Notes: generated from the letters alone by a model not told the origin. A stretch of 63,942 bases of DNA, filler included, from Octopus bimaculoides (GCF_001194135.2; 5 parts of 5 records of this genome joined end to end with filler, not necessarily neighbours in it), one strand, 5' to 3'. Numbered from the whole stretch's first letter, positions 48,653 to 57,885 are shown. Translations and numbers: made by a program.

Positions 48653-48849
48653 GAGGGAGAGATGAAAGGAGGGGAGAGCAGAGGATGGGACAGCAGAGGA
48701 GAGGGATAGCGGAGGAAGGGAAGAACAGAGGAGGGGGAGAGCAGAGGAGGGGGAGAGCAGAGAAGGGGGTGAGAGCGGAGGACGGGGAGAGCAGAGGAGG
48801 GAGAGGGCGGAGAACGGGGAGAGCAGAGGAGGCTCTCCCAGTAATGCCC

Positions 48850-49115
48850 CCTCCCAGTAATTTAGAGGTTCGGCAATGGAGATTTATTAAATGTGCCCCA
48901 TGACTTAGCGGTTCGGCAATGGATTTCGATAAAATTCCGCCCCCTCCGTAATCTAGCATTTCGGCAATGGAGATCGATAAAAGGCCCCCCCGCCGCCGGG
49001 GTCTAGCGGATGGGCAATGGAGATCAATATAATACACCCACCTCTGTAACCTAAGAATTCGGAAAATGGAGATCGTTAAGATGCCCACCCCTCACGCAAC
49101 CTAACGGTTAGGCAA
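48850..49115 (-). repeat. Degenerate reverse-oriented copies (~6) of the 42-bp satellite
   Basis: Repeated TAGCGGTTCGGCAATGGAGATCGATAAAA. Confidence 0.85.
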
Positions 49116-50320
49116 TGGACATTTTATCGAACTTCATTGCCGAACCGCTAGTTCACGGGGAGATTTTATCGATATCTATTGCCGAACCGCTAATTCACGG
49201 GGACATTTTATCGATCTCCATTGCCGAACCACTAGATCACGATGATATTTTAGCGATCTCCATTGCCGAAGCGCTAATTCACAGGGACATTTTATCGATC
49301 AGCATTGCCGAACCGCTAAGACACGGGGACATTTTATCAATCTCCAAGGCCGAACAGCTAGTTCACGGGGACATTTTATCGAACTCCATTGCCGAACCGC
49401 TAATTCACGGGAACATTTTATTGATCTCTATTGCCGAACCACTAATTCACGGGGACATTTTATCGATCACCATTGCCGAACCGCTAGATCACGGGGACAT
49501 TTTATCGAACACCATTGCCAAACCGCTAAGTCAAGGGGACATTTTGTCGATCTACATTGCCAAACCGCTAGTCTCACGGGGACATTTTATCGATCTCCAT
49601 TGCTGAACCGCCTAGATCACGGGGACATTTTATCAATCAACATTACCGAACCGCTAGTTCACGGGGTCATTTTATCGAACTCCATTGCCGAACCGCTAGT
49701 TCACGGGGACACTTTATCGATATTCATTGCCGAACCGCTATGTTACGGGGACATTTTATCGAACACCATTGCCGAATCGCTAATGCATGGGGACATTTTA
49801 TCGAAATCCATTGCCGAATCGCTAGTTCACGGGGACATTTTATCGTTATCACTGCTGAACCGCTAAGTCACGGGGACAATTTATCGATCTTCATTGCCGA
49901 ACCGCTAATGCACGGGGACATTTTATCGAACTCCATTGCCGAACCGCTAAGTCACGGGGACATTTTATCGACCATCATTGCCGAACCGCTAGTCACAGGG
50001 AGACATTTTATCGATATCCATTGCTGAACCGCCTAGATCACGGGGACATTTTATCAATCTCCATTGCCGAACCGCTATGTTACGGGGACATTTTATCGAA
50101 CACCATTGCCGAATCGCTAATGCATGGGGACATTTTATCGAAATCCATTGCCGAATCGCTACGTCACGGGGACATTTTATCGATCTTTATTGCCGAACCG
50201 CTATATCACGGGGACATTTTATCGATCTCATTGCCGTACCGCTAAGTCATGGGGACATTTTATCGATCTCATTGCCGTACCGCTAAGTCACGGGGACATT
50301 TTATCGATCCCCATTGCCGT
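49116..50320 (+). repeat. 42-bp tandem satellite, ~29 copies
   Basis: Consensus approx. CATTGCCGAACCGCTAGTTCACGGGGACATTTTATCGATCTC; period 41-43 bp. Confidence 0.95.
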
Positions 50321-50743
50321 AGCTATTGGCTCTCGAACGAACGAACGTACATACGTTCAGGCCAAGAGCAACGAACGAAGTTCCGTAACTCCTGGTTCCA
50401 ACGAACGTACGTACGTTCAGGCCAAGAGCAACGAACGAAGTTCCGTGGCTCTTGGTTCGAACGAACGTATGTACGTTCGTCTGAAGAGCAACGAACGAAG
50501 TTCCGTAGCTCTTGGCTCGAACGAACGTACGTACGTTCGGGCCAAGAGCAACGATCGAAGTTCCGCTGCTCTTGGTTCGAATGAATGTACGTACGTTCGG
50601 TCCAAGAGCAATGAACGAAGTTCCGTAGCTCTTCGCCCGAATGAACGTACGTACGTTCAGGCCAAGAGCAACGAACGAAGTTCCTTAACTCCTGGCTCCA
50701 ACGAACGTACGTACGTTCGGGCCAAGAGCAACGAACGAAGTTC
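50319..50743 (+). repeat. 60-bp tandem repeat, 7 copies
   Basis: ACGAACGTACGTACGTTCGGGCCAAGAGCAACGAACGAAGTTCCGTAGCTCTTGGCTCGA; units start at 50341, 50401, 50461, 50521, 50581, 50641 and 50701. Confidence 0.97.
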
Positions 50744-50884
50744 TGAGTATGGGATACGTACTTCCGGAAAATACCGAGGTGGTCCTGGAAAGTTCCGAGG
50801 ATCGGATAGGTACTTCCTGGAAAATTTGAGGACTTCCTGTGAAGTTCCGAGGATTTCATGGAAAGGTCCTAGGATGAGAAACGT

Positions 50885-50965
50885 TCACGTAACTTAGCGG
50901 TTCGGTAATGGAGGTCGTTAAAATGTCCTCGTAAATTAGCGGTTCGGCAATGGAGTATTGAAAAT
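50885..50965 (-). repeat. Two reverse-oriented 42-bp satellite units
   Basis: GTAACTTAGCGGTTCGGTAATGG...AAATTAGCGGTTCGGCAATGG. Confidence 0.85.
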
Positions 50966-52671
50966 GTCTGTTAAAAATGTTTGACGATGTTTGTTAAAAT
51001 GTATCATGACGAATTTTTAGTGCTAATGATGTCACAAGATGTTTGACGAGGTTTGAAAGGAAATGTTTGATGAAAATGTTTGGTTTGGGGAAAATATTTT
51101 CATCAAACATCTATCAATCATCTTTATCAAACACGTTTAATGAAGATGTTTGATAAAAATGTTTGATGAAAATATTTCATGAAAATGTTTGAAGAAAATG
51201 TTTGATGGAAATATTTGATGAAAATGTTTGAAGATGTTTGGCAAAAACATTTGATGCTTCAAATTGTTTGATGAAGGTGTTTGATGGATGTCGATGTTCC
51301 ATGACATTTGACGATGATGTTTGATGAAAATGTTTGATGACGATGTTTGTTAAAAATGTTTCATGACGAATTTTTAGTGCTTATGGAGATGCTTCCTGAA
51401 GATGATTGAAGGTGTTTCAAGGAAGATAGATGTTTGATAAAAATGTTTGGTTTCTGGAAAATATTTTAATCAAACATCCATAACTCTTCTTCATCAAACA
51501 CGTTTGATGAAAATGTTTGATAAAAATTTTTGATGAAATTTTTGATGGAAATGTTTGATGAAAATGTTGGTAGAAGTTTGGCAAAATCATTTGCTGCTTG
51601 AAAGTGTTCGGTGTTTCATGATATTTGACGTTGATGTTTGATAAAAATGTTTGTTAAAAATGTTTGACAATGTTTTATAAAATGTTTCATGACAATTTTT
51701 AGTGCTAATGAACATGTTTCATGAAGATTTTGAAGACGTTTGAAGGAAAATGTTTGATAAAAATGTTTGGTTTGGGGAAAATATTTTCATCAAACATCCA
51801 TAAATCTTCTTTATCAAACACGTTTGATGAAGATGTTTGATAAAAATGTTTGATGAAAATATTTGATGAAAATGTTTCATTAAAATGTTTGATGGAAACA
51901 TTTGATGAAAGCGTTTGAAGATGTTTGATGAAAACATTTGATGCTTCAAAGTGTTTGATGAAGATGTTTGATGGATGTCGGTGTTTCATGACATTTGAAG
52001 ATGATGATGTTTGATGAAAATGTTTGAAGATGTTTGGTGAAAATGTTTGATGACGATGTTTGTCAAAAATGTTACATGATGAATTTTTAGTGCTAATGAA
52101 GATATTTCATTAAGATGTTTGAAGACGTTTGATGGAAGATGATTGATGATAATGTTTGATAACAATGCTTGAAACCTTATCAAATGTTTGTAGATGTATG
52201 ATGATGATGTTTGATGAAAATGTTTGACAAATTACTTTGATGTTTCAAAATGTTTGAGGAAAATGTTCTATTATCTTATGTCTGATGAAAATATTTTATG
52301 CCGATCTTTGATGTTTGATGGATGTCGGTGTTTTATGACATTTAATGATGATGTTTGATGAAAAGGTTTCAAGTTGTTTGATGAAAATGTTTGATGACGA
52401 TGTTAAAAATGTTTCATGGCGATTTTTATTGCTAACGAAGATGTTAAATGAAGATGTTTGAAGACGTTTGAAGGAAGATGTTTGATGATAATGTTTGATG
52501 AAAATGTTTGGTTTGGGGAAAATATTTTCATCAAACATCCATCAATTATCATTATCAAACAGGTATGATGAAGATGTTTGATAAAAATGTTTGATGAAAA
52601 TATTTGATGAAAATGTTTCATTAAAATGTTTGATGGAAATATTTGATGAAAATGTTTGAAGATGTTTGATG
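50966..52671 (+). repeat. ~13-bp degenerate satellite (GATGAAAATGTTT) with a ~325-390-bp higher-order period
   Basis: Landmark ATTTTTAGTGCTAATGA at ~51013, 51370, 51695, 52083 and 52422. Confidence 0.92.
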
Positions 52672-53241
52672 ATAACGGAAACTAACGGGAACTAACGGAA
52701 ACTAACGGAAAATAACGGAAATTAACGGAAACTAACGGAAAATAAAGGAAACTAACTCTTTCTCGCCCTCTCTGTCTGTCTGTCTGTCTCTCTCTCAGTC
52801 TCTCTCTCTCTTTCGCTCAATCGCTGTCTCTCTGTCTCTGTCTCTCTGTATTTCTTTCTCTCTGTCTCCCTCTCTCGAGAGAGAGATGGATGTGCGTACG
52901 TGCCTACGTTAATAAGTATGCTCCTCTCTCTTGCTCTTCTCTGTCTCTCGCTCCACTCTCTTTCGCTGCGCTCTCTCTCTCCCTCTTCTCTCTCTCTCCC
53001 TCTTCTCTCTCTCTCCCTCTTCTCTCTCTCTCCCTCTTCTCTCTCTCTCCCTCCTCTCGCTTCTCTCTCTCTCACACTTCTCTCTCTCTCGCTCTGCTCT
53101 CCCTCTATCGTTCCTCTTTCTCTCGCTCCTCTCTCTCTTGTTCCTCTCTCTCTCGCTCATCTCTCTCTCTCTCGTTCCTCTCTCTCTCGCTCCTCTCTCT
53201 CTCTCGCCCCTCTCTCTCCCACTCTACTCTCTCTCTCACTC

Positions 53242-53279
<38 letters not shown>

Positions 53280-54679
53280 CCTCTCTTTCTCTCGATCTTT
53301 TCTCTCTCTCGTTCTACACTCTCTCTCGCTCCACTCTCCCCTTGCTTCTCTCTCTCGCTCCTCTCTCTCTCGCTCCACACTCTCTCTCGCTCCTCTCTTT
53401 CCCTTGCTCCTCTTTCTCTCTCTCGCTTCTCTTTCTCTCTCTCGCTCCTCTTTCTCTCTCTCGCTCCTCTCTCTCCTCTTTCTCTTTTTCTCCTCTCCCT
53501 CTTCCTCCTCACTCTCTTGCTCCTATCTCGTTCCTCTCTCTATCTTGCTCCTATCATTTTTGCTCCTCTCTCTGTTGCTCCTCTCTCTCTACCGCTAACG
53601 AGAAGTAACGGAATCTAACGGAAACTAACGGGAACTAACGGAAACTAACGGAAAGTAACGGAAACTAAAGGACACTAACGGAATGTATCGGCAACTAACG
53701 GAAAGTAACTGAAAGTAACAATTTCTCTCCCTGTCTGTCTCTCTCTATCTCTGTGTTTCTCTCTCGCTCTATCTCTGTCCCTCTGTCTCTCTCTATCTCT
53801 TTCTCTCTTTCTCTGCCTCTCTGCCTCTCTGTCTCTCTGTCTCTTTGTCTCTCTCTCTCTCTTTCTTTCTCTCTCTGTCTCTCACTCCCTCTCGCCCACT
53901 CCCTTTCTGTCGCACTCTCTCTCTCTCTCTCGCCCTATCACTGTCTCTCTCTCTATCTATCTCTTGCTCTCTCTCCCTCTCTCTCCCTCTCTCGCTGTCT
54001 CTCTCGCTGTCTCTCTCGCTCCGCTCTCTCTCTCTCTCTCTTGCACCTCTCTCTCTCGTATGTATGGATGTACTTACGTGCCTAACTTAGTATGTATGGA
54101 TATACATACGTGTCTACGTACGTATGTATGGATGTACGTATGTATGGATGTACGTGTGTACCTATGAACGTATGTATGGATGTACCTACGTACCTACGTA
54201 AATATGTATGGGGTATGTACGTACCTGCCTAATTATGTATGGATGTACGTACGTAACTGCGTACGTATGTATGTATGTACGTACGTATCTACGTACGTAT
54301 GGATGGATGTACGTACGTACCTACGTACGTATCTATGGATGTACGTACGTGTCTACGTTAGTATTATGATCCTATCTCTTGCTCCACTGTCTCTCTCTCG
54401 CTCTTCTCTCTCTCTCTCTCGCTCCTCTCCTTCTCTCGCTCCTCTCCTTCTCTCGCTCCACTCTTTCTCTCGCACTTCTCTCGCTCCTCTCTCTCTCGGT
54501 CCTCTGTCTCTCTGGCTCCTCTTTCTCTCGTTCGTCTCTCTCTCTCTCTCTCTCCTGTCTCTCTCTCGCTCCTGTCTCTCTCTCGCTCCTGTCTCTCTCT
54601 CGCTCCTGTCTCTCTCTCTCGCTCCTGTCTCTCTCTCGCTCCTGTCTCTCTCTCGCTCCTGTCTCTCTCTCCTCTCTCG
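52672..54679 (+). repeat. Two tandem copies of a ~1-kb composite module: (AACGGAAACT)n, CT-rich, GTAC-rich, (CTCGCTCCTCT)n
   Basis: Copy 1 is ~52672-53595. Copy 2 is ~53596-54679 and runs into a gap. The sub-blocks occur in the same order in both. Confidence 0.8.
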
Positions 54680-55667
54680 NNNNNNNNNNNNNNNNNNNNN
54701 NNNNNNNNNNNNNNNNNNNNNNNNNNNNNNNNNNNNNNNNNNNNNNNNNNNNNNNNNNNNNNNNNNNNNNNNNNNNNNNNNNNNNNNNNNNNNNNNNNNN
54801 NNNNNNNNNNNNNNNNNNNNNNNNNNNNNNNNNNNNNNNNNNNNNNNNNNNNNNNNNNNNNNNNNNNNNNNNNNNNNNNNNNNNNNNNNNNNNNNNNNNN
54901 NNNNNNNNNNNNNNNNNNNNNNNNNNNNNNNNNNNNNNNNNNNNNNNNNNNNNNNNNNNNNNNNNNNNNNNNNNNNNNNNNNNNNNNNNNNNNNNNNNNN
55001 NNNNNNNNNNNNNNNNNNNNNNNNNNNNNNNNNNNNNNNNNNNNNNNNNNNNNNNNNNNNNNNNNNNNNNNNNNNNNNNNNNNNNNNNNNNNNNNNNNNN
55101 NNNNNNNNNNNNNNNNNNNNNNNNNNNNNNNNNNNNNNNNNNNNNNNNNNNNNNNNNNNNNNNNNNNNNNNNNNNNNNNNNNNNNNNNNNNNNNNNNNNN
55201 NNNNNNNNNNNNNNNNNNNNNNNNNNNNNNNNNNNNNNNNNNNNNNNNNNNNNNNNNNNNNNNNNNNNNNNNNNNNNNNNNNNNNNNNNNNNNNNNNNNN
55301 NNNNNNNNNNNNNNNNNNNNNNNNNNNNNNNNNNNNNNNNNNNNNNNNNNNNNNNNNNNNNNNNNNNNNNNNNNNNNNNNNNNNNNNNNNNNNNNNNNNN
55401 NNNNNNNNNNNNNNNNNNNNNNNNNNNNNNNNNNNNNNNNNNNNNNNNNNNNNNNNNNNNNNNNNNNNNNNNNNNNNNNNNNNNNNNNNNNNNNNNNNNN
55501 NNNNNNNNNNNNNNNNNNNNNNNNNNNNNNNNNNNNNNNNNNNNNNNNNNNNNNNNNNNNNNNNNNNNNNNNNNNNNNNNNNNNNNNNNNNNNNNNNNNN
55601 NNNNNNNNNNNNNNNNNNNNNNNNNNNNNNNNNNNNNNNNNNNNNNNNNNNNNNNNNNNNNNNNNNN

Positions 55668-55827
55668 TTTATCAAATGTTTGTAGATGTATGATGATGAT
55701 GTTTGATGAAAATACTTGATGACGATGTTTGATGAAAATGTTTGACAAAGACATTTGATGCCTCAAAGTGTTTGATGAAGTTGTTCTCTTATATTATGTC
55801 TCAGGAAAATGTTTGATGACGATGTTT
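55668..55827 (+). repeat. 13-bp satellite fragment
   Basis: Matches 52176-52290 (TTATCAAATGTTTGTAGATGTATGATGATGATG). Confidence 0.85.
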
Positions 55828-55877
55828 GAGAGACAGAGAGTCAGAGATTGAAAGAGAGACAGATAGGGAGAGAAAGA

Positions 55878-57674
55878 GTTACTTTCCGCAAGTTTCCGTT
55901 AGTTTCCGTTACATTCCGTTAGTTTCCGTTACTTTCCGTCATTTTCCGTTATTTTCCGTTGCCTTCCGTTCTTTTCCGTTACTTTCCGTTAGTTTCGGTT
56001 ACTTTCAGTACGTTTCCGTTAGTTTCCGTTAGTTTCAGTTACTTTACGCTAGTTTCTGTTAGTTTCCGTTACTTTCCATTAGTTTTCGTTACTTTCCGTT
56101 ACTTTCCGTTGCTTTCCGTTAGTATCGGTTAGTTTCCGTTATTTTCGTTAGTTTCCGTTAGTTTCCGTTACTTTCCGTTAGTTCCCGTTAGTTTCCGTTA
56201 CTTTCCGTTAGTTCCCGCTAGTTTCCGTTACTTTCCGTTAGTATCCGTTAGTTCCCGTTAGTTTCCGTTACTTTATGTTAGTTTCCGTTAGTTTCCGTTA
56301 CTTTTCGTTAGTTTCCGTTAGTTTCCGTTACTTTCCATTAGTTTCCGTTGCTTTCCGATAGTTTCCATTACTTTCCGTTACCTGCCGTTAGTTTCCTTTA
56401 TTTCCGTTAGTTCCCGTTAGTTTCCGTTAGTTTCCGTTACTTTTCATTCGTTTCCGCTAATTTCCGTTAGTTTCCGTTACTTTCCGTTAGTTTCCGTTAG
56501 TTTCCGTTATTTCCGTTAGTTCCCGTTAGTTTCCGTTAGTTTCCGTTACTTTTCGTTAGTTTCCCATAGTTTCCGTTAGTTTCCGTTAATTCCCGTTAGT
56601 TTCCTTTCTTTCCGTTAGTTCCCGTTACTTTCCGTTAGGTTCCGATTGTTTCCGTTAGTTTCCGTTAGATTCCGTTACTTTCCGTTACTTTCCGTTAGAT
56701 TACGTTACTTTCCGTTAGTTTCCATTACTTTCTGTTAGTTCCCTTTACTTTCCGTTAGTTTCTGTTAGATTCCGTTACTTTCCGTTAGTTTCCGTTTGTT
56801 TCCGTTACATTCAGTTACTTTCCGTTAGTTTCCGTTATTTTTCGTTAATTTCTATTAGATTCCGTTAGTTTCCTTTACTTTCCGTTACTTTGCGTTAGTT
56901 TCCGTTACATTCTGTTACTTTCCTTTATTTTCCGTTATTTTCCGTTGCTTTTCGTTAGTTTCGGTTAGTTTCCGTTATTTTCGTTAGTTTCCGCTAATTT
57001 ACGTCAGTTTCCGTTACATTCCGTTGCTTTCCGTTAGTTTCGGTTATTTCCGTTAGTTCCCGTTAGTTTCCGTTAGTTTCCGTTACTTTTCGTTAGTTCC
57101 CCATAGTTTCCGTTAGTTTCCGTTAATTTCCGTTAGTTTTGCGTTACTTCTCGATAGTTTCCGATAGTTTCCGTTACCTTCCGTTAGTTTCCGTTATTTC
57201 CGTTAATTCCCGTTAGTTTCCTTTCTTTCCGTTAGTTCCCGTTACTTTCCGTTAGGTTCCGTTTGTTTCCGTTAGTTTCCGTTACTTTCCGTTAGATTAC
57301 GTTACTTTCCGTTACTTTCCATTACTTTATGTTAGTTCCCTTTACTTTCCGTTAGTTTCCGTAAGTTTCTGTTAGATTCCGTTACTTTCCCTTACTTTCC
57401 GTTTGTTTCCGTTACATTCAGTTACTTTGCGTTAGCTTCCGTTACATTCTGTTACTTTCCTTTATTTTCCGTTGTTTTCCGTTGCTTTTCGTTAGTTTCG
57501 GTTAGTTTCCGTTATTTTCGTTAGTTTCCGTTACTTTCCTTTACTTTCCGTTAGTTCCCGTTAGTTTCCGTTACTTTCCGTTAGTTCCCGCTAGTTTCCG
57601 TTACTCTCCGTTAGCATCCGTTAGTTGCCGTTAGTTTCCGTTACTTTATGTTATTTTCCGTTGCTTTTCGTTAG
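55878..57674 (-). repeat. ~1.8-kb 10-bp satellite (TTTCCGTTAG/TTTCCGTTAC on the + strand)
   Basis: Roughly 180 units; reverse complement of the short arrays at 52672-52757 and 53596-53718. Confidence 0.97.
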
Positions 57675-57885
57675 TAAGAGCGGTAGAGAGAGAGGAGCAA
57701 AAATGATAGGAGCAAGCTAGAGAGAGGAACGAGATAGGAGGAAGAGAGTGTGGAGGAAGAAGGAGAGGAGCAAGAGAGAATGACGAGCGAGAGAGGTGCG
57801 AGAGAGAGAAAGAGGAGCGAGAGAGACAAAGAGGAGCGAGAGAGAGAGAGGAGCAAGGGAAAGAGAGGAGCGAGAGAGAGAAAAG

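What the first reader, a model, noticed from the sequence alone, without database searches (positions are those of the whole stretch)
48653..57885. 9.2-kb composite satellite block made of at least five ordered, partly inverted repeat families
Seen: apart from a ~1-kb gap, almost the whole scaffold between two spacers is tandem repeat. The order is GA tract, 42-bp (reverse), 42-bp (forward), 60-bp, 42-bp (reverse), 13-bp, module, module, gap, 13-bp, inverted module. This ordered, inverted layout is not a random microsatellite pile. Established: foldback-type elements (Drosophila FB, sea-urchin TU) have arms built from short tandem units. Inference: this may be an uncharacterised foldback-like element or a modular heterochromatic (centromeric or subtelomeric) satellite unit.
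Basis: partly seen in the sequence, partly recalled or inferred. Interest (0 to 1): 0.75.

Follow-up and report, generated by a model that had tools for sequence, protein, structure and literature searches.

The report
Composite satellite DNA block with inversions
This 9.2-kb scaffold piece is non-coding satellite DNA: nine tandem-repeat families joined without spacers, including a roughly 1-kb four-part cassette present twice forward and once inverted, which is a known kind of repeat architecture and not a demonstrable transposon.

Summary
Tandem Repeats Finder (TRF) covers 85.5% of the 8,245 read bases, against 0.02% in resampled sequence, and the listed order of blocks is correct.

Corrections:
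- There are nine families, not five.
- The "13-bp" family is really five copies of a 325-390-bp complex monomer.
- The left "reverse 42-bp" block is a 48-50-bp variant.
- The "module" is a four-part cassette: 10-bp array, then CT-B, then a 32-bp ACGT-rich array, then CT-A.

The cassette's internal junctions are conserved at 78-85% identity. This holds in two direct copies and one partial inverted copy, while the 10-bp array varies from 8 to 12 to 181 units.

Orientation switches recur at four scales:
- 19-bp hairpins in each 350-bp monomer
- a 25-nt-arm palindrome in each 60-bp unit
- head-to-head 42-bp arrays
- the kb-scale inverted cassette

Nothing is coding. There is no codon periodicity, no Pfam family above cut-off, no protein homologue, no Rfam family above its gathering score and no tRNA.

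Foldback-transposon membership cannot be shown, because the piece contains no outer termini and no target-site duplications. The closest known kind is satellite DNA organised in dyad-symmetric cassettes, as in Tribolium.

Junctions, the gap and copy number therefore could not be checked against reads, and the source organism could not be verified.

The parts
48653..48832 (+). GA16: purine-rich 16-bp array (AGGAGGGGGAGAGCAG, 10.4 copies, 66-bp higher order). It runs to the left end of the piece.
   Evidence: TRF; BLAST of consensus; no significant relation to the other GA/CT blocks
48833..49116 (-). S42 variant in reverse orientation: six degenerate copies with a 48-50-bp period and a C-rich linker.
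   Evidence: Unit walk; BLAST; about 68% identity to the forward array
49117..50319 (+). S42 forward array: 28.6 copies of a 42-bp unit, 83% matches. It has two near-invariant boxes (GGACATTTTATCGA and CATTGCCGAACCGCTA) separated by variable linkers, and contains a 100-bp exact internal duplication.
50320..50743 (.). S60 array: about 7 copies of a 60-bp unit that is itself a palindrome (25-nt arms, 88% complementary, no spacer) plus a short spacer.
   Evidence: TRF; inverted repeats; DNA fold of a dimer -38.2 kcal/mol, z -6.9
50738..50854 (+). S52: 52-bp unit, 2.2 copies.
   Evidence: TRF; no other copy in the piece
50888..50968 (-). Two S42 copies in reverse orientation.
   Evidence: 36/41 and 36/38 matches to the consensus
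50959..52672 (+). S13/350: five copies of a 325-390-bp complex monomer built from 13-bp subrepeats (GTTTGATGAAAAT). Each monomer carries a 19-bp-stem hairpin.
   Evidence: shifts of 353 and 683; 83-91% identity; z -5.7
52673..53594 (+). Cassette 1: S10 array (TAACGGAAAC, 8.4 copies, 52673-52756), CT-B (52757-52885), a single S32-like unit (52886-52920) and CT-A with a 17-bp period (52920-53590).
   Evidence: (52886-53233 against 54335-54678, 78%)
53595..54679 (+). Cassette 2: S10 array (12.5 copies, 53595-53719), CT-B (53724-54057), S32 array (32-bp ACGT-rich unit, about 10 copies, 54052-54358) and CT-A (54359-54679). It is cut by the gap.
54680..55667 (.). Assembly gap: 988 N, length estimated. 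It hides at least one junction between families.
55668..55826 (+). Fragment of an S13/350 monomer in forward orientation. Its first 45 bases are identical to 52177-52221.
55827..57885 (-). Partial inverted cassette: reverse complement of CT-B (55827-55877), S10 inverted (181 units, 55878-57675) and reverse complement of CT-A (57676-57885). It runs to the right end of the piece.

Best explanation
This is a real, non-coding composite satellite-DNA block of the kind found in heterochromatin. Nine tandem-repeat families follow each other with abrupt, spacer-less junctions.

Part of the block is organised as a cassette of about 1 kb (10-bp array, CT-B, 32-bp ACGT-rich array, CT-A). The transition zones of this cassette are conserved, while the copy number of each internal array is free to change: 8, 12 or 181 units of the 10-bp repeat, and 1 or 10 units of the 32-bp repeat.

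Inferred from what is known of satellite DNA, not shown here: the arrays grow and shrink by replication slippage and unequal exchange. The orientation switches come from fold-back or template-switch events, or from inversions by ectopic exchange inside the repeat field. These switches are seen at four scales: hairpin in each 350-bp monomer, palindromic 60-bp unit, head-to-head 42-bp arrays, kb-scale inverted cassette.

The block encodes no protein or known RNA. Any role would be structural, through non-B DNA or protein-binding boxes in chromatin, and that is unproven.
For: Repeat content and order.

The cassette is real. All four internal junctions are conserved between copies (52886-53233 against 54335-54678). 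The same three 10-mer variants and the same 30-bp higher-order pattern occur in the forward and inverted 10-bp arrays.

The inverted copies are diverged paralogues, not mirror-image artefacts: 81-85% identity with different copy numbers for the cassette, and about 68% with a different unit length for S42.

The relative inversion does not depend on scaffolding. The left contig has S13(+) with cassette(+), while the right contig has S13(+) joined to cassette(-) within one contig.

Non-coding status:
- Variability in the 42-bp unit falls in two linker patches (72 of 114 substitutions in 10 positions) and shows no third-position pattern (0.084/0.092/0.115).
- Frames are open on both strands and are broken by indels.
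- No Pfam family reaches its cut-off.
- Two protein searches found no homologue.
- Rfam gave only sub-threshold miRNA-family hits on palindromic repeats, and there are no tRNAs.

Dyad symmetry.

Against: No external evidence of any kind could be obtained.
- Scans of public collections gave only chance or unrelated matches.
- Chromosomal location is unknown.
- The structure of the inverted arms also fits the schematic of a foldback element.
- Derivation of one family from its neighbour is not supported at consensus level, except that S60 and S32 share an ACGT core (p about 0.003).
- The hairpin at the head-to-head S42 junction is not significantly more stable than shuffles (z -1.8).
Confidence: 0.62

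Rival explanations
1. Foldback-type DNA transposon, or a rearranged remnant of one. The arms would be CT-A / 10-bp array / CT-B, corresponding to flanking domain, variable tandem repeats and inner domain. They lie in inverted orientation around a middle domain made of the 32-bp array, CT-A, the gap and the 13-bp fragment.
For: The inverted arms 52920-54057 and 55827-57885 have the same domain order from outside to inside and different repeat numbers. [quoted passage not shown] The 10-bp base unit with a 30-bp higher order recalls, from my own knowledge, the 10/20/31-bp repeats of Drosophila FB arms.
Against: No outer terminus is visible. The left arm is preceded by another direct copy of the cassette, which is a tandem arrangement and not a bounded one. 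The right arm runs off the piece. There are no target-site duplications and no ORF with a transposase domain. No other copy was found anywhere. The rest of the piece (S42, S60, S52, S13/350, GA16) lies outside any such element.
Confidence: 0.12
2. Assembly chimera. The individual arrays exist in the genome, but their order, orientation or copy numbers in this short gapped scaffold were created by the assembler or scaffolder.
For: The piece begins and ends inside low-complexity arrays and holds a 988-N gap. The first 45 bases right of the gap are identical to 52177-52221, as expected where an assembly graph breaks at a shared repeat. Exact repeats of up to 100 bp lie inside the arrays. No reads could be laid on the sequence.
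Against: The cassette junctions recur three times with 78-85% identity, not 100%, so they were not copied from one locus. Arrays carry many distinguishing variants and higher-order patterns. The S13-to-inverted-cassette junction lies inside one contig.
Confidence: 0.15
3. Spacer of a multigene cluster, such as the rDNA intergenic spacer, or a subtelomeric minisatellite stack.
For: Ordered stacks of different sub-repeat families are typical of such regions (my own knowledge).
Against: There is no rRNA or other Rfam family above its gathering score, no tRNA and no TTAGGG repeat. Nothing in the piece anchors it to either kind of region.
Confidence: 0.05
4. Coding tandem-repeat protein, with 14-aa repeats from the 42-bp array and 20-aa repeats from the 60-bp array.
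For: ORFs of 163 and 257 aa run through the arrays because 42 and 60 are multiples of three.
Against: Frames are open in several phases and on both strands and are interrupted by indels. There is no third-position excess of variation. No Pfam family reaches its cut-off; one weak sub-threshold hit only. Two searches found no homologue, and no called gene with these products is on record.
Confidence: 0.01

Closest known systems
Macro-dyad-symmetric satellite 'cassettes' of Tribolium madens, T. freemani and T. castaneum (PMC13081366)
   Same: Different satellite families are intermingled without foreign sequence. Subarrays occur in direct and inverted orientation. Inversion sites and transition zones are conserved and frame a variable number of repeats. 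Satellites are joined directly to microsatellite-like arrays (here).
   Different: In Tribolium there are thousands of copies over megabases on all chromosomes, verified on HiFi reads, with two related satellites of about 110-bp origin. Here there are three cassette copies in 9 kb, nine families with much shorter units, and abundance, location and read support are unknown.
Foldback transposons (Drosophila FB, Tetris of D. virilis, sea-urchin TU; PMC4079207)
   Same: Inverted arms are built from tandem repeats of variable number between a flanking and an inner domain, with a non-coding middle domain. Satellites can be seeded from the arm repeats.
   Different: Here no termini, no 8-10-bp target-site duplications, no dispersed copies and no transposase partner could be shown. 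The left arm is part of a direct tandem of cassettes.
Tandem-repeat-containing MITEs and Helentron-borne satellite-like arrays of bivalves (DTC84/pearl family, PMC3879986; Crassostrea gigas Helentrons, PMC7492417)
   Same: These are mollusc elements that combine a short tandem array with a microsatellite in a fixed modular order (abstracts).
   Different: Those elements have unique left and right arms and at most about six monomers. This piece has no unique arm sequence at all and has arrays of up to 181 units.
Dyad-symmetric (non-B-form) centromeric satellites (PMC5889037) and cichlid centromeres organised around inverted elements (PMC13652916)
   Same: Satellite units carry short dyad symmetries predicted to form cruciforms, and blocks of satellite occur in alternating orientation (here).
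   Different: Centromeric identity is established in those systems (CENP-A data or methylation dip). Nothing here links the piece to a centromere.

Membership tests
Satellite DNA | Head-to-tail tandem arrays of a monomer | tested here: met
   TRF: 28.6 x 42 bp, 6.8 x 60 bp, 180.6 x 10 bp and others. Coverage is 85.5% against 0.02% in resamples.
Satellite DNA | Non-coding | tested here: met
   No codon periodicity. No Pfam family above cut-off. No homologues. No Rfam family above gathering score.
Satellite DNA | Higher-order structure or local homogenisation within arrays | tested here: met
   S42 shows a lag-8 identity peak and a 100-bp exact duplicate. S10 has 30-bp and about 530-bp higher orders. 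S13 is organised in roughly 350-bp monomers.
Satellite DNA | High genomic abundance and long arrays in heterochromatin | not testable with these tools
No genome of the source organism is available. Collection scans gave nothing related.
Dyad-symmetric satellite cassette organisation (Tribolium type) | Direct and inverted subarrays of the same satellite side by side | tested here: met
   S42 reverse 48857-49122 abuts S42 forward 49117-50319. The S10 cassette occurs forward at 52673-54679 and inverted at 55827-57885.
Dyad-symmetric satellite cassette organisation (Tribolium type) | Conserved transition zones and inversion sites framing a variable number of repeats | tested here: inconclusive
   Transition zones are conserved among the three cassette copies in the piece, with 8, 12 and 181 units. 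Three copies in one scaffold cannot show genome-wide conservation, and each inversion site is seen only once.
Dyad-symmetric satellite cassette organisation (Tribolium type) | Multi-kb to Mb regions at (peri)centromeres | not testable with these tools
   No chromosome-level context and no reads.
Foldback transposon | Long inverted arms made of tandem repeats of variable number | tested here: met
   52920-54057 against 55827-57885. Junction pairs are 85% and 81% identical in inverted orientation. The 10-bp array has 12.5 units in one arm and 181 in the other.
Foldback transposon | The arms are terminal: defined outer ends shared by both arms | tested here: inconclusive
   The right arm runs off the piece at 57885. 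The left arm is preceded by another direct cassette (52673-52920), not by unrelated flanking DNA.
Foldback transposon | Target-site duplications of about 8-10 bp | not testable with these tools
   The outer ends are not contained in the piece.
Foldback transposon | Multiple dispersed copies, with or without an autonomous partner encoding a transposase | not testable with these tools
   No genome or reads are available. Within the piece no ORF has a transposase domain.
Tandem-repeat-containing MITE / Helentron-borne array (bivalve type) | Short central array flanked by unique left and right arms | tested here: not met
   No unique sequence longer than a few tens of bases exists in the piece. 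Arrays reach 29 and 181 units.

The most novel reading that the evidence does not exclude
The four-part cassette (10-bp array / CT-B / 32-bp array / CT-A) would be a self-propagating unit, spread by foldback-type transposition or through extrachromosomal circles. If so, the Tribolium-type 'macro-dyad cassette' organisation would extend to a second, very distant animal phylum, with much shorter units. The two invariant boxes of the 42-bp unit would then be candidate protein-binding sites.
Probability: 0.12. Interest if true: 0.6.

Novelty: new member of a known kind. Interest (0 to 1): 0.3.

Why it matters
If the junctions are real, the piece is a compact, fully readable example of how several satellite families are stitched together. 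It shows fixed transition zones, free copy number and repeated orientation switches. Such blocks are usually missing from assemblies, so this one could serve as a probe set (42-bp, 60-bp, 10-bp and ~350-bp units) for locating heterochromatin or centromeres in the source species. Taken alone it is ordinary repeat DNA. It carries no gene or known RNA and does not demonstrate a new mechanism.

Tried and rejected
- **Read support:** Nothing else was tried in its place.
- **Exact-product look-ups** of four repeat ORFs in public assemblies: none on record.
- **Homology searches** with the 257-aa ORF (spanning S42/S60/S52) and the 163-aa S42 ORF: no hit.
- **Full-text search** for six exact motif strings in papers: no paper.
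- **Collection scans:**
  - The S42 pattern gave 0 matches in metagenome contigs.
  - The 10-bp pattern gave 0 matches in viral contigs.
  - It gave one chance five-copy match in an Opitutaceae MAG.
  - It gave two unrelated metagenome contigs.
- **Rfam at permissive threshold:** only miRNA-family and snoRNA hits far below their gathering scores, nearly all on palindromic or repeat sequence. Rejected as RNA genes.
- **Coding reading of the 14-aa and 20-aa repeats:** rejected.
- **Idea that neighbouring families derive from one another** (S13 from the A/T box of S42, S52 from S60, GA16 from CT-A): consensus-level similarity is no better than shuffles, except for S60 and S32. It stays an unsupported impression from the junction sequences.
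- **Head-to-head S42 junction as a stable hairpin:** z of only -1.8.
- **CpG-decay test on S42:** no excess substitution rate at CpG sites.
- **Telomere repeat:** absent.
- **Bacterial-type promoter and terminator scan:** at chance level and irrelevant here.
- **Cephalopod repeat literature**: no description of these units.


Full report
**What is there**

The piece 48653-57885 holds 8,245 read bases and one run of 988 N at 54680-55667. TRF reports 43 rows of arrays. Their union covers 85.5% of the read bases, against 0.02% in first-order Markov resamples. Most of the remainder is still repeat that TRF scores poorly.

Mapping the family consensuses back on both strands and a self-comparison give this order:

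| Coordinates | Block |
|---|---|
| 48653-48832 | GA16, purine-rich 16-mer |
| 48833-49116 | Six degenerate reverse copies of a 48-50-bp variant of the 42-bp family |
| 49117-50319 | 28.6 forward copies of the 42-bp unit S42 |
| about 50320-50743 | About 7 copies of a 60-bp unit, S60 |
| 50738-50854 | 2.2 copies of a 52-bp unit, S52 |
| 50888-50968 | Two reverse S42 copies |
| 50959-52672 | Five copies of a 325-390-bp complex monomer made of 13-bp subrepeats, 83-91% identical |
| 52673-53594 | Cassette 1 |
| 53595-54679 | Cassette 2 |
| 54680-55667 | Gap |
| 55668-55826 | Forward fragment of the 13-bp-type monomer |
| 55827-57885 | Partial inverted cassette |

**The gap**

- Left of it is CT-A, a 17-bp pyrimidine-rich period.
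- Right of it is the interior of a 13-bp-type monomer.
- The two edges share no overlap, so at least one family junction is hidden in the gap.
- No reading frame matters here, because nothing is coding. The ORFs that cross the gap are N read as X.
- The first 45 bases right of the gap are identical to 52177-52221. That is what one expects where an assembly graph breaks at a shared repeat.

One conclusion survives any error in scaffolding. The left contig joins the 13-bp-type array and the cassette in the same orientation. The right contig joins them in opposite orientations within a single contig. If the right contig were flipped, the picture would be three direct cassettes flanked by inverted 13-bp-type arrays. 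Either way an inversion is present.

**The cassette**

Each module consists of four parts:
1. A 10-bp array (TAACGGAAAC).
2. A pyrimidine-rich stretch, CT-B.
3. A 32-bp ACGT-rich array, S32.
4. A second pyrimidine-rich array with a 17-bp period, CT-A.

The junctions are conserved between copies.
- S10 to CT-B is present in both forward cassettes and in the inverted one (78% mean column identity).
- CT-A to S10 is present forward and inverted (85%), including non-repetitive landmarks.
- S32 to CT-A is present in cassettes 1 and 2 (52886-53233 against 54335-54678, 78%).

The inverted BLAST pairs 53380-53718/57880-57541 (85% over 345 bp) and 53603-53765/55994-55830 (81%) say the same.

Copy numbers differ widely. 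The 10-bp array has 8.4, 12.5 and 181 units, and the 32-bp array has 1 and about 10 units. The 181-unit array uses the same three main variants as the forward arrays. It has a 30-bp higher-order pattern and a further periodicity of about 530 bp.

The identities are 78-85% and not about 100%, and copy numbers differ. The inverted copy is therefore a diverged paralogue and not a mirror-image sequencing or assembly artefact.

**Inversions at several scales**

- Each ~350-bp monomer holds a 19-bp-stem hairpin (DNA fold -14.4 kcal/mol, z -5.7; arms listed).
- Each 60-bp unit is a palindrome with 25-nt arms, 88% complementary, with no spacer. A dimer folds at -38.2 kcal/mol, z -6.9.
- The 42-bp family switches orientation head-to-head at 49117. 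The two sides are only about 68% alike and differ in unit length. The junction hairpin is not significantly stable (z -1.8). This is therefore an old juxtaposition and not a fresh fold-back.
- The cassette is inverted at kb scale.

**Not coding and no known RNA**

ORFs of up to 257 aa run through the 42-bp and 60-bp arrays because both periods are multiples of three. They occur in several frames and on both strands and are broken by indels.

Variation among the 28 full S42 copies is concentrated in two linker patches (72 of 114 substitutions in 10 of 42 positions; chi-square p about 4e-24, overstated because copies share ancestry). It shows no third-position excess.

Further negative results:
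- No Pfam family reaches its cut-off.
- Two protein searches found nothing.
- Four exact-product look-ups found nothing.
- Rfam gives only hits far below the gathering scores, nearly all miRNA-family matches on palindromic or repeat sequence.
- There are no tRNAs and no TTAGGG repeat.

**Relations between families**

Reading the junctions suggests shared motifs, such as GAAAATGT at the S42-reverse/13-bp junction, GAAGTTCCG in S60 and S52, and CCG at the S42/S60 junction. In a consensus-against-shuffle test, only S60 and S32 (a shared ACGT core) are more alike than chance (p about 0.003). The idea that each family was born from its neighbour is therefore left as an unsupported impression. All junctions are abrupt and lack foreign spacer sequence. 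This matches what has been described for mollusc satellites (PMC5139131).

**External evidence**

None could be obtained.
- No paper in the library contains the motif strings.
- Cephalopod repeat papers found do not describe these units.
- Scans of metagenome, prokaryote-genome and viral collections gave no match for S42. For the 10-mer they gave only chance or unrelated arrays.

**Interpretation**

The best-supported reading is a composite satellite block with a cassette organisation and repeated orientation switches. Slippage and unequal exchange would change copy numbers. Fold-back or template-switch events, or ectopic exchange, would produce the inversions. These mechanisms are inferred from general knowledge of satellite DNA and are not shown here.

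The closest described architecture is that of Tribolium satellites. [quoted passage not shown] Related ideas are non-B-form dyad symmetries in centromeric satellites (PMC5889037) and cichlid centromeres with satellite blocks in alternating orientation (PMC13652916).

The foldback-transposon reading is not excluded. The inverted arms match the published schematic of flanking domain, variable tandem repeats, inner domain and middle domain (PMC4079207). The defining features that would make it an element could not be tested, and the left arm sits in a direct tandem of cassettes. Those features are terminal position of the arms, target-site duplications and dispersed copies.

**Verdict**

This is a new member of a known kind, ordinary in mechanism, and of modest interest unless genome-wide data show that the cassette is a propagating or centromere-defining unit.

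Noticed in passing
window 55669-55713 and 52177-52221: The first 45 bases right of the assembly gap are an exact copy of an interior stretch of the fourth ~350-bp monomer. Identity then drops to 83%. This looks like a contig break at a shared repeat node.
   Followed up: partly
window 49725-49824 and 50062-50161: A 100-bp exact duplicate lies inside the 42-bp array, at a shift of 337 bp (eight units). It is the longest exact repeat in the piece and a sign of a recent segmental duplication within the array.
   Followed up: partly
window 49117-50319: The 42-bp unit has two near-invariant boxes (GGACATTTTATCGA and CATTGCCGAACCGCTA) separated by hypervariable linkers of 4-6 bp. The boxes are also recognisable in the older reverse 48-50-bp variant. 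This could reflect protein binding or merely linker instability.
   Followed up: partly
window 48833-49116 and 48653-48832: The C-rich linker that lengthens the reverse S42 variant (for example GCCCCCTCCC) is the reverse complement of the GGAGGGGG core of the adjoining GA16 array. This could be chance in biased sequence.
   Followed up: no
window 54090-54358: The 32-bp ACGT-rich array draws a cluster of sub-threshold Rfam miRNA-family hits (mir-297, mir-5014, mir-466 and others; best 41.8 bits against a gathering score of 90). These are low-complexity palindrome matches, not miRNA genes.
   Followed up: yes
window 49117-50319: Substitutions at the four CpG sites of the 42-bp unit are mostly transitions (15 against 3). 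Their rate per site (0.080) is no higher than at other positions (0.086 and 0.101), so there is no clear sign of methylation-driven decay.
   Followed up: partly
L003 1-720 (metagenome contig Ga0065721_10106210): This eukaryote-looking contig has a (GAAAGTAACG)n array grading into (GAAACGGAAAA)n, next to sequence that by eye looks like tRNA genes (not checked with the tRNA tool). It shares only the 10-mer motif with the window, with no other similarity.
   Followed up: partly
L001 2648-2697 and L002 1107-1194: Two bacterial contigs (an Opitutaceae MAG and a high-GC metagenome contig) carry 5 and 8.8 copies of the same 10-mer in intergenic or terminal positions. These are chance convergence of a short repeat and unrelated to the window.
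   Followed up: yes
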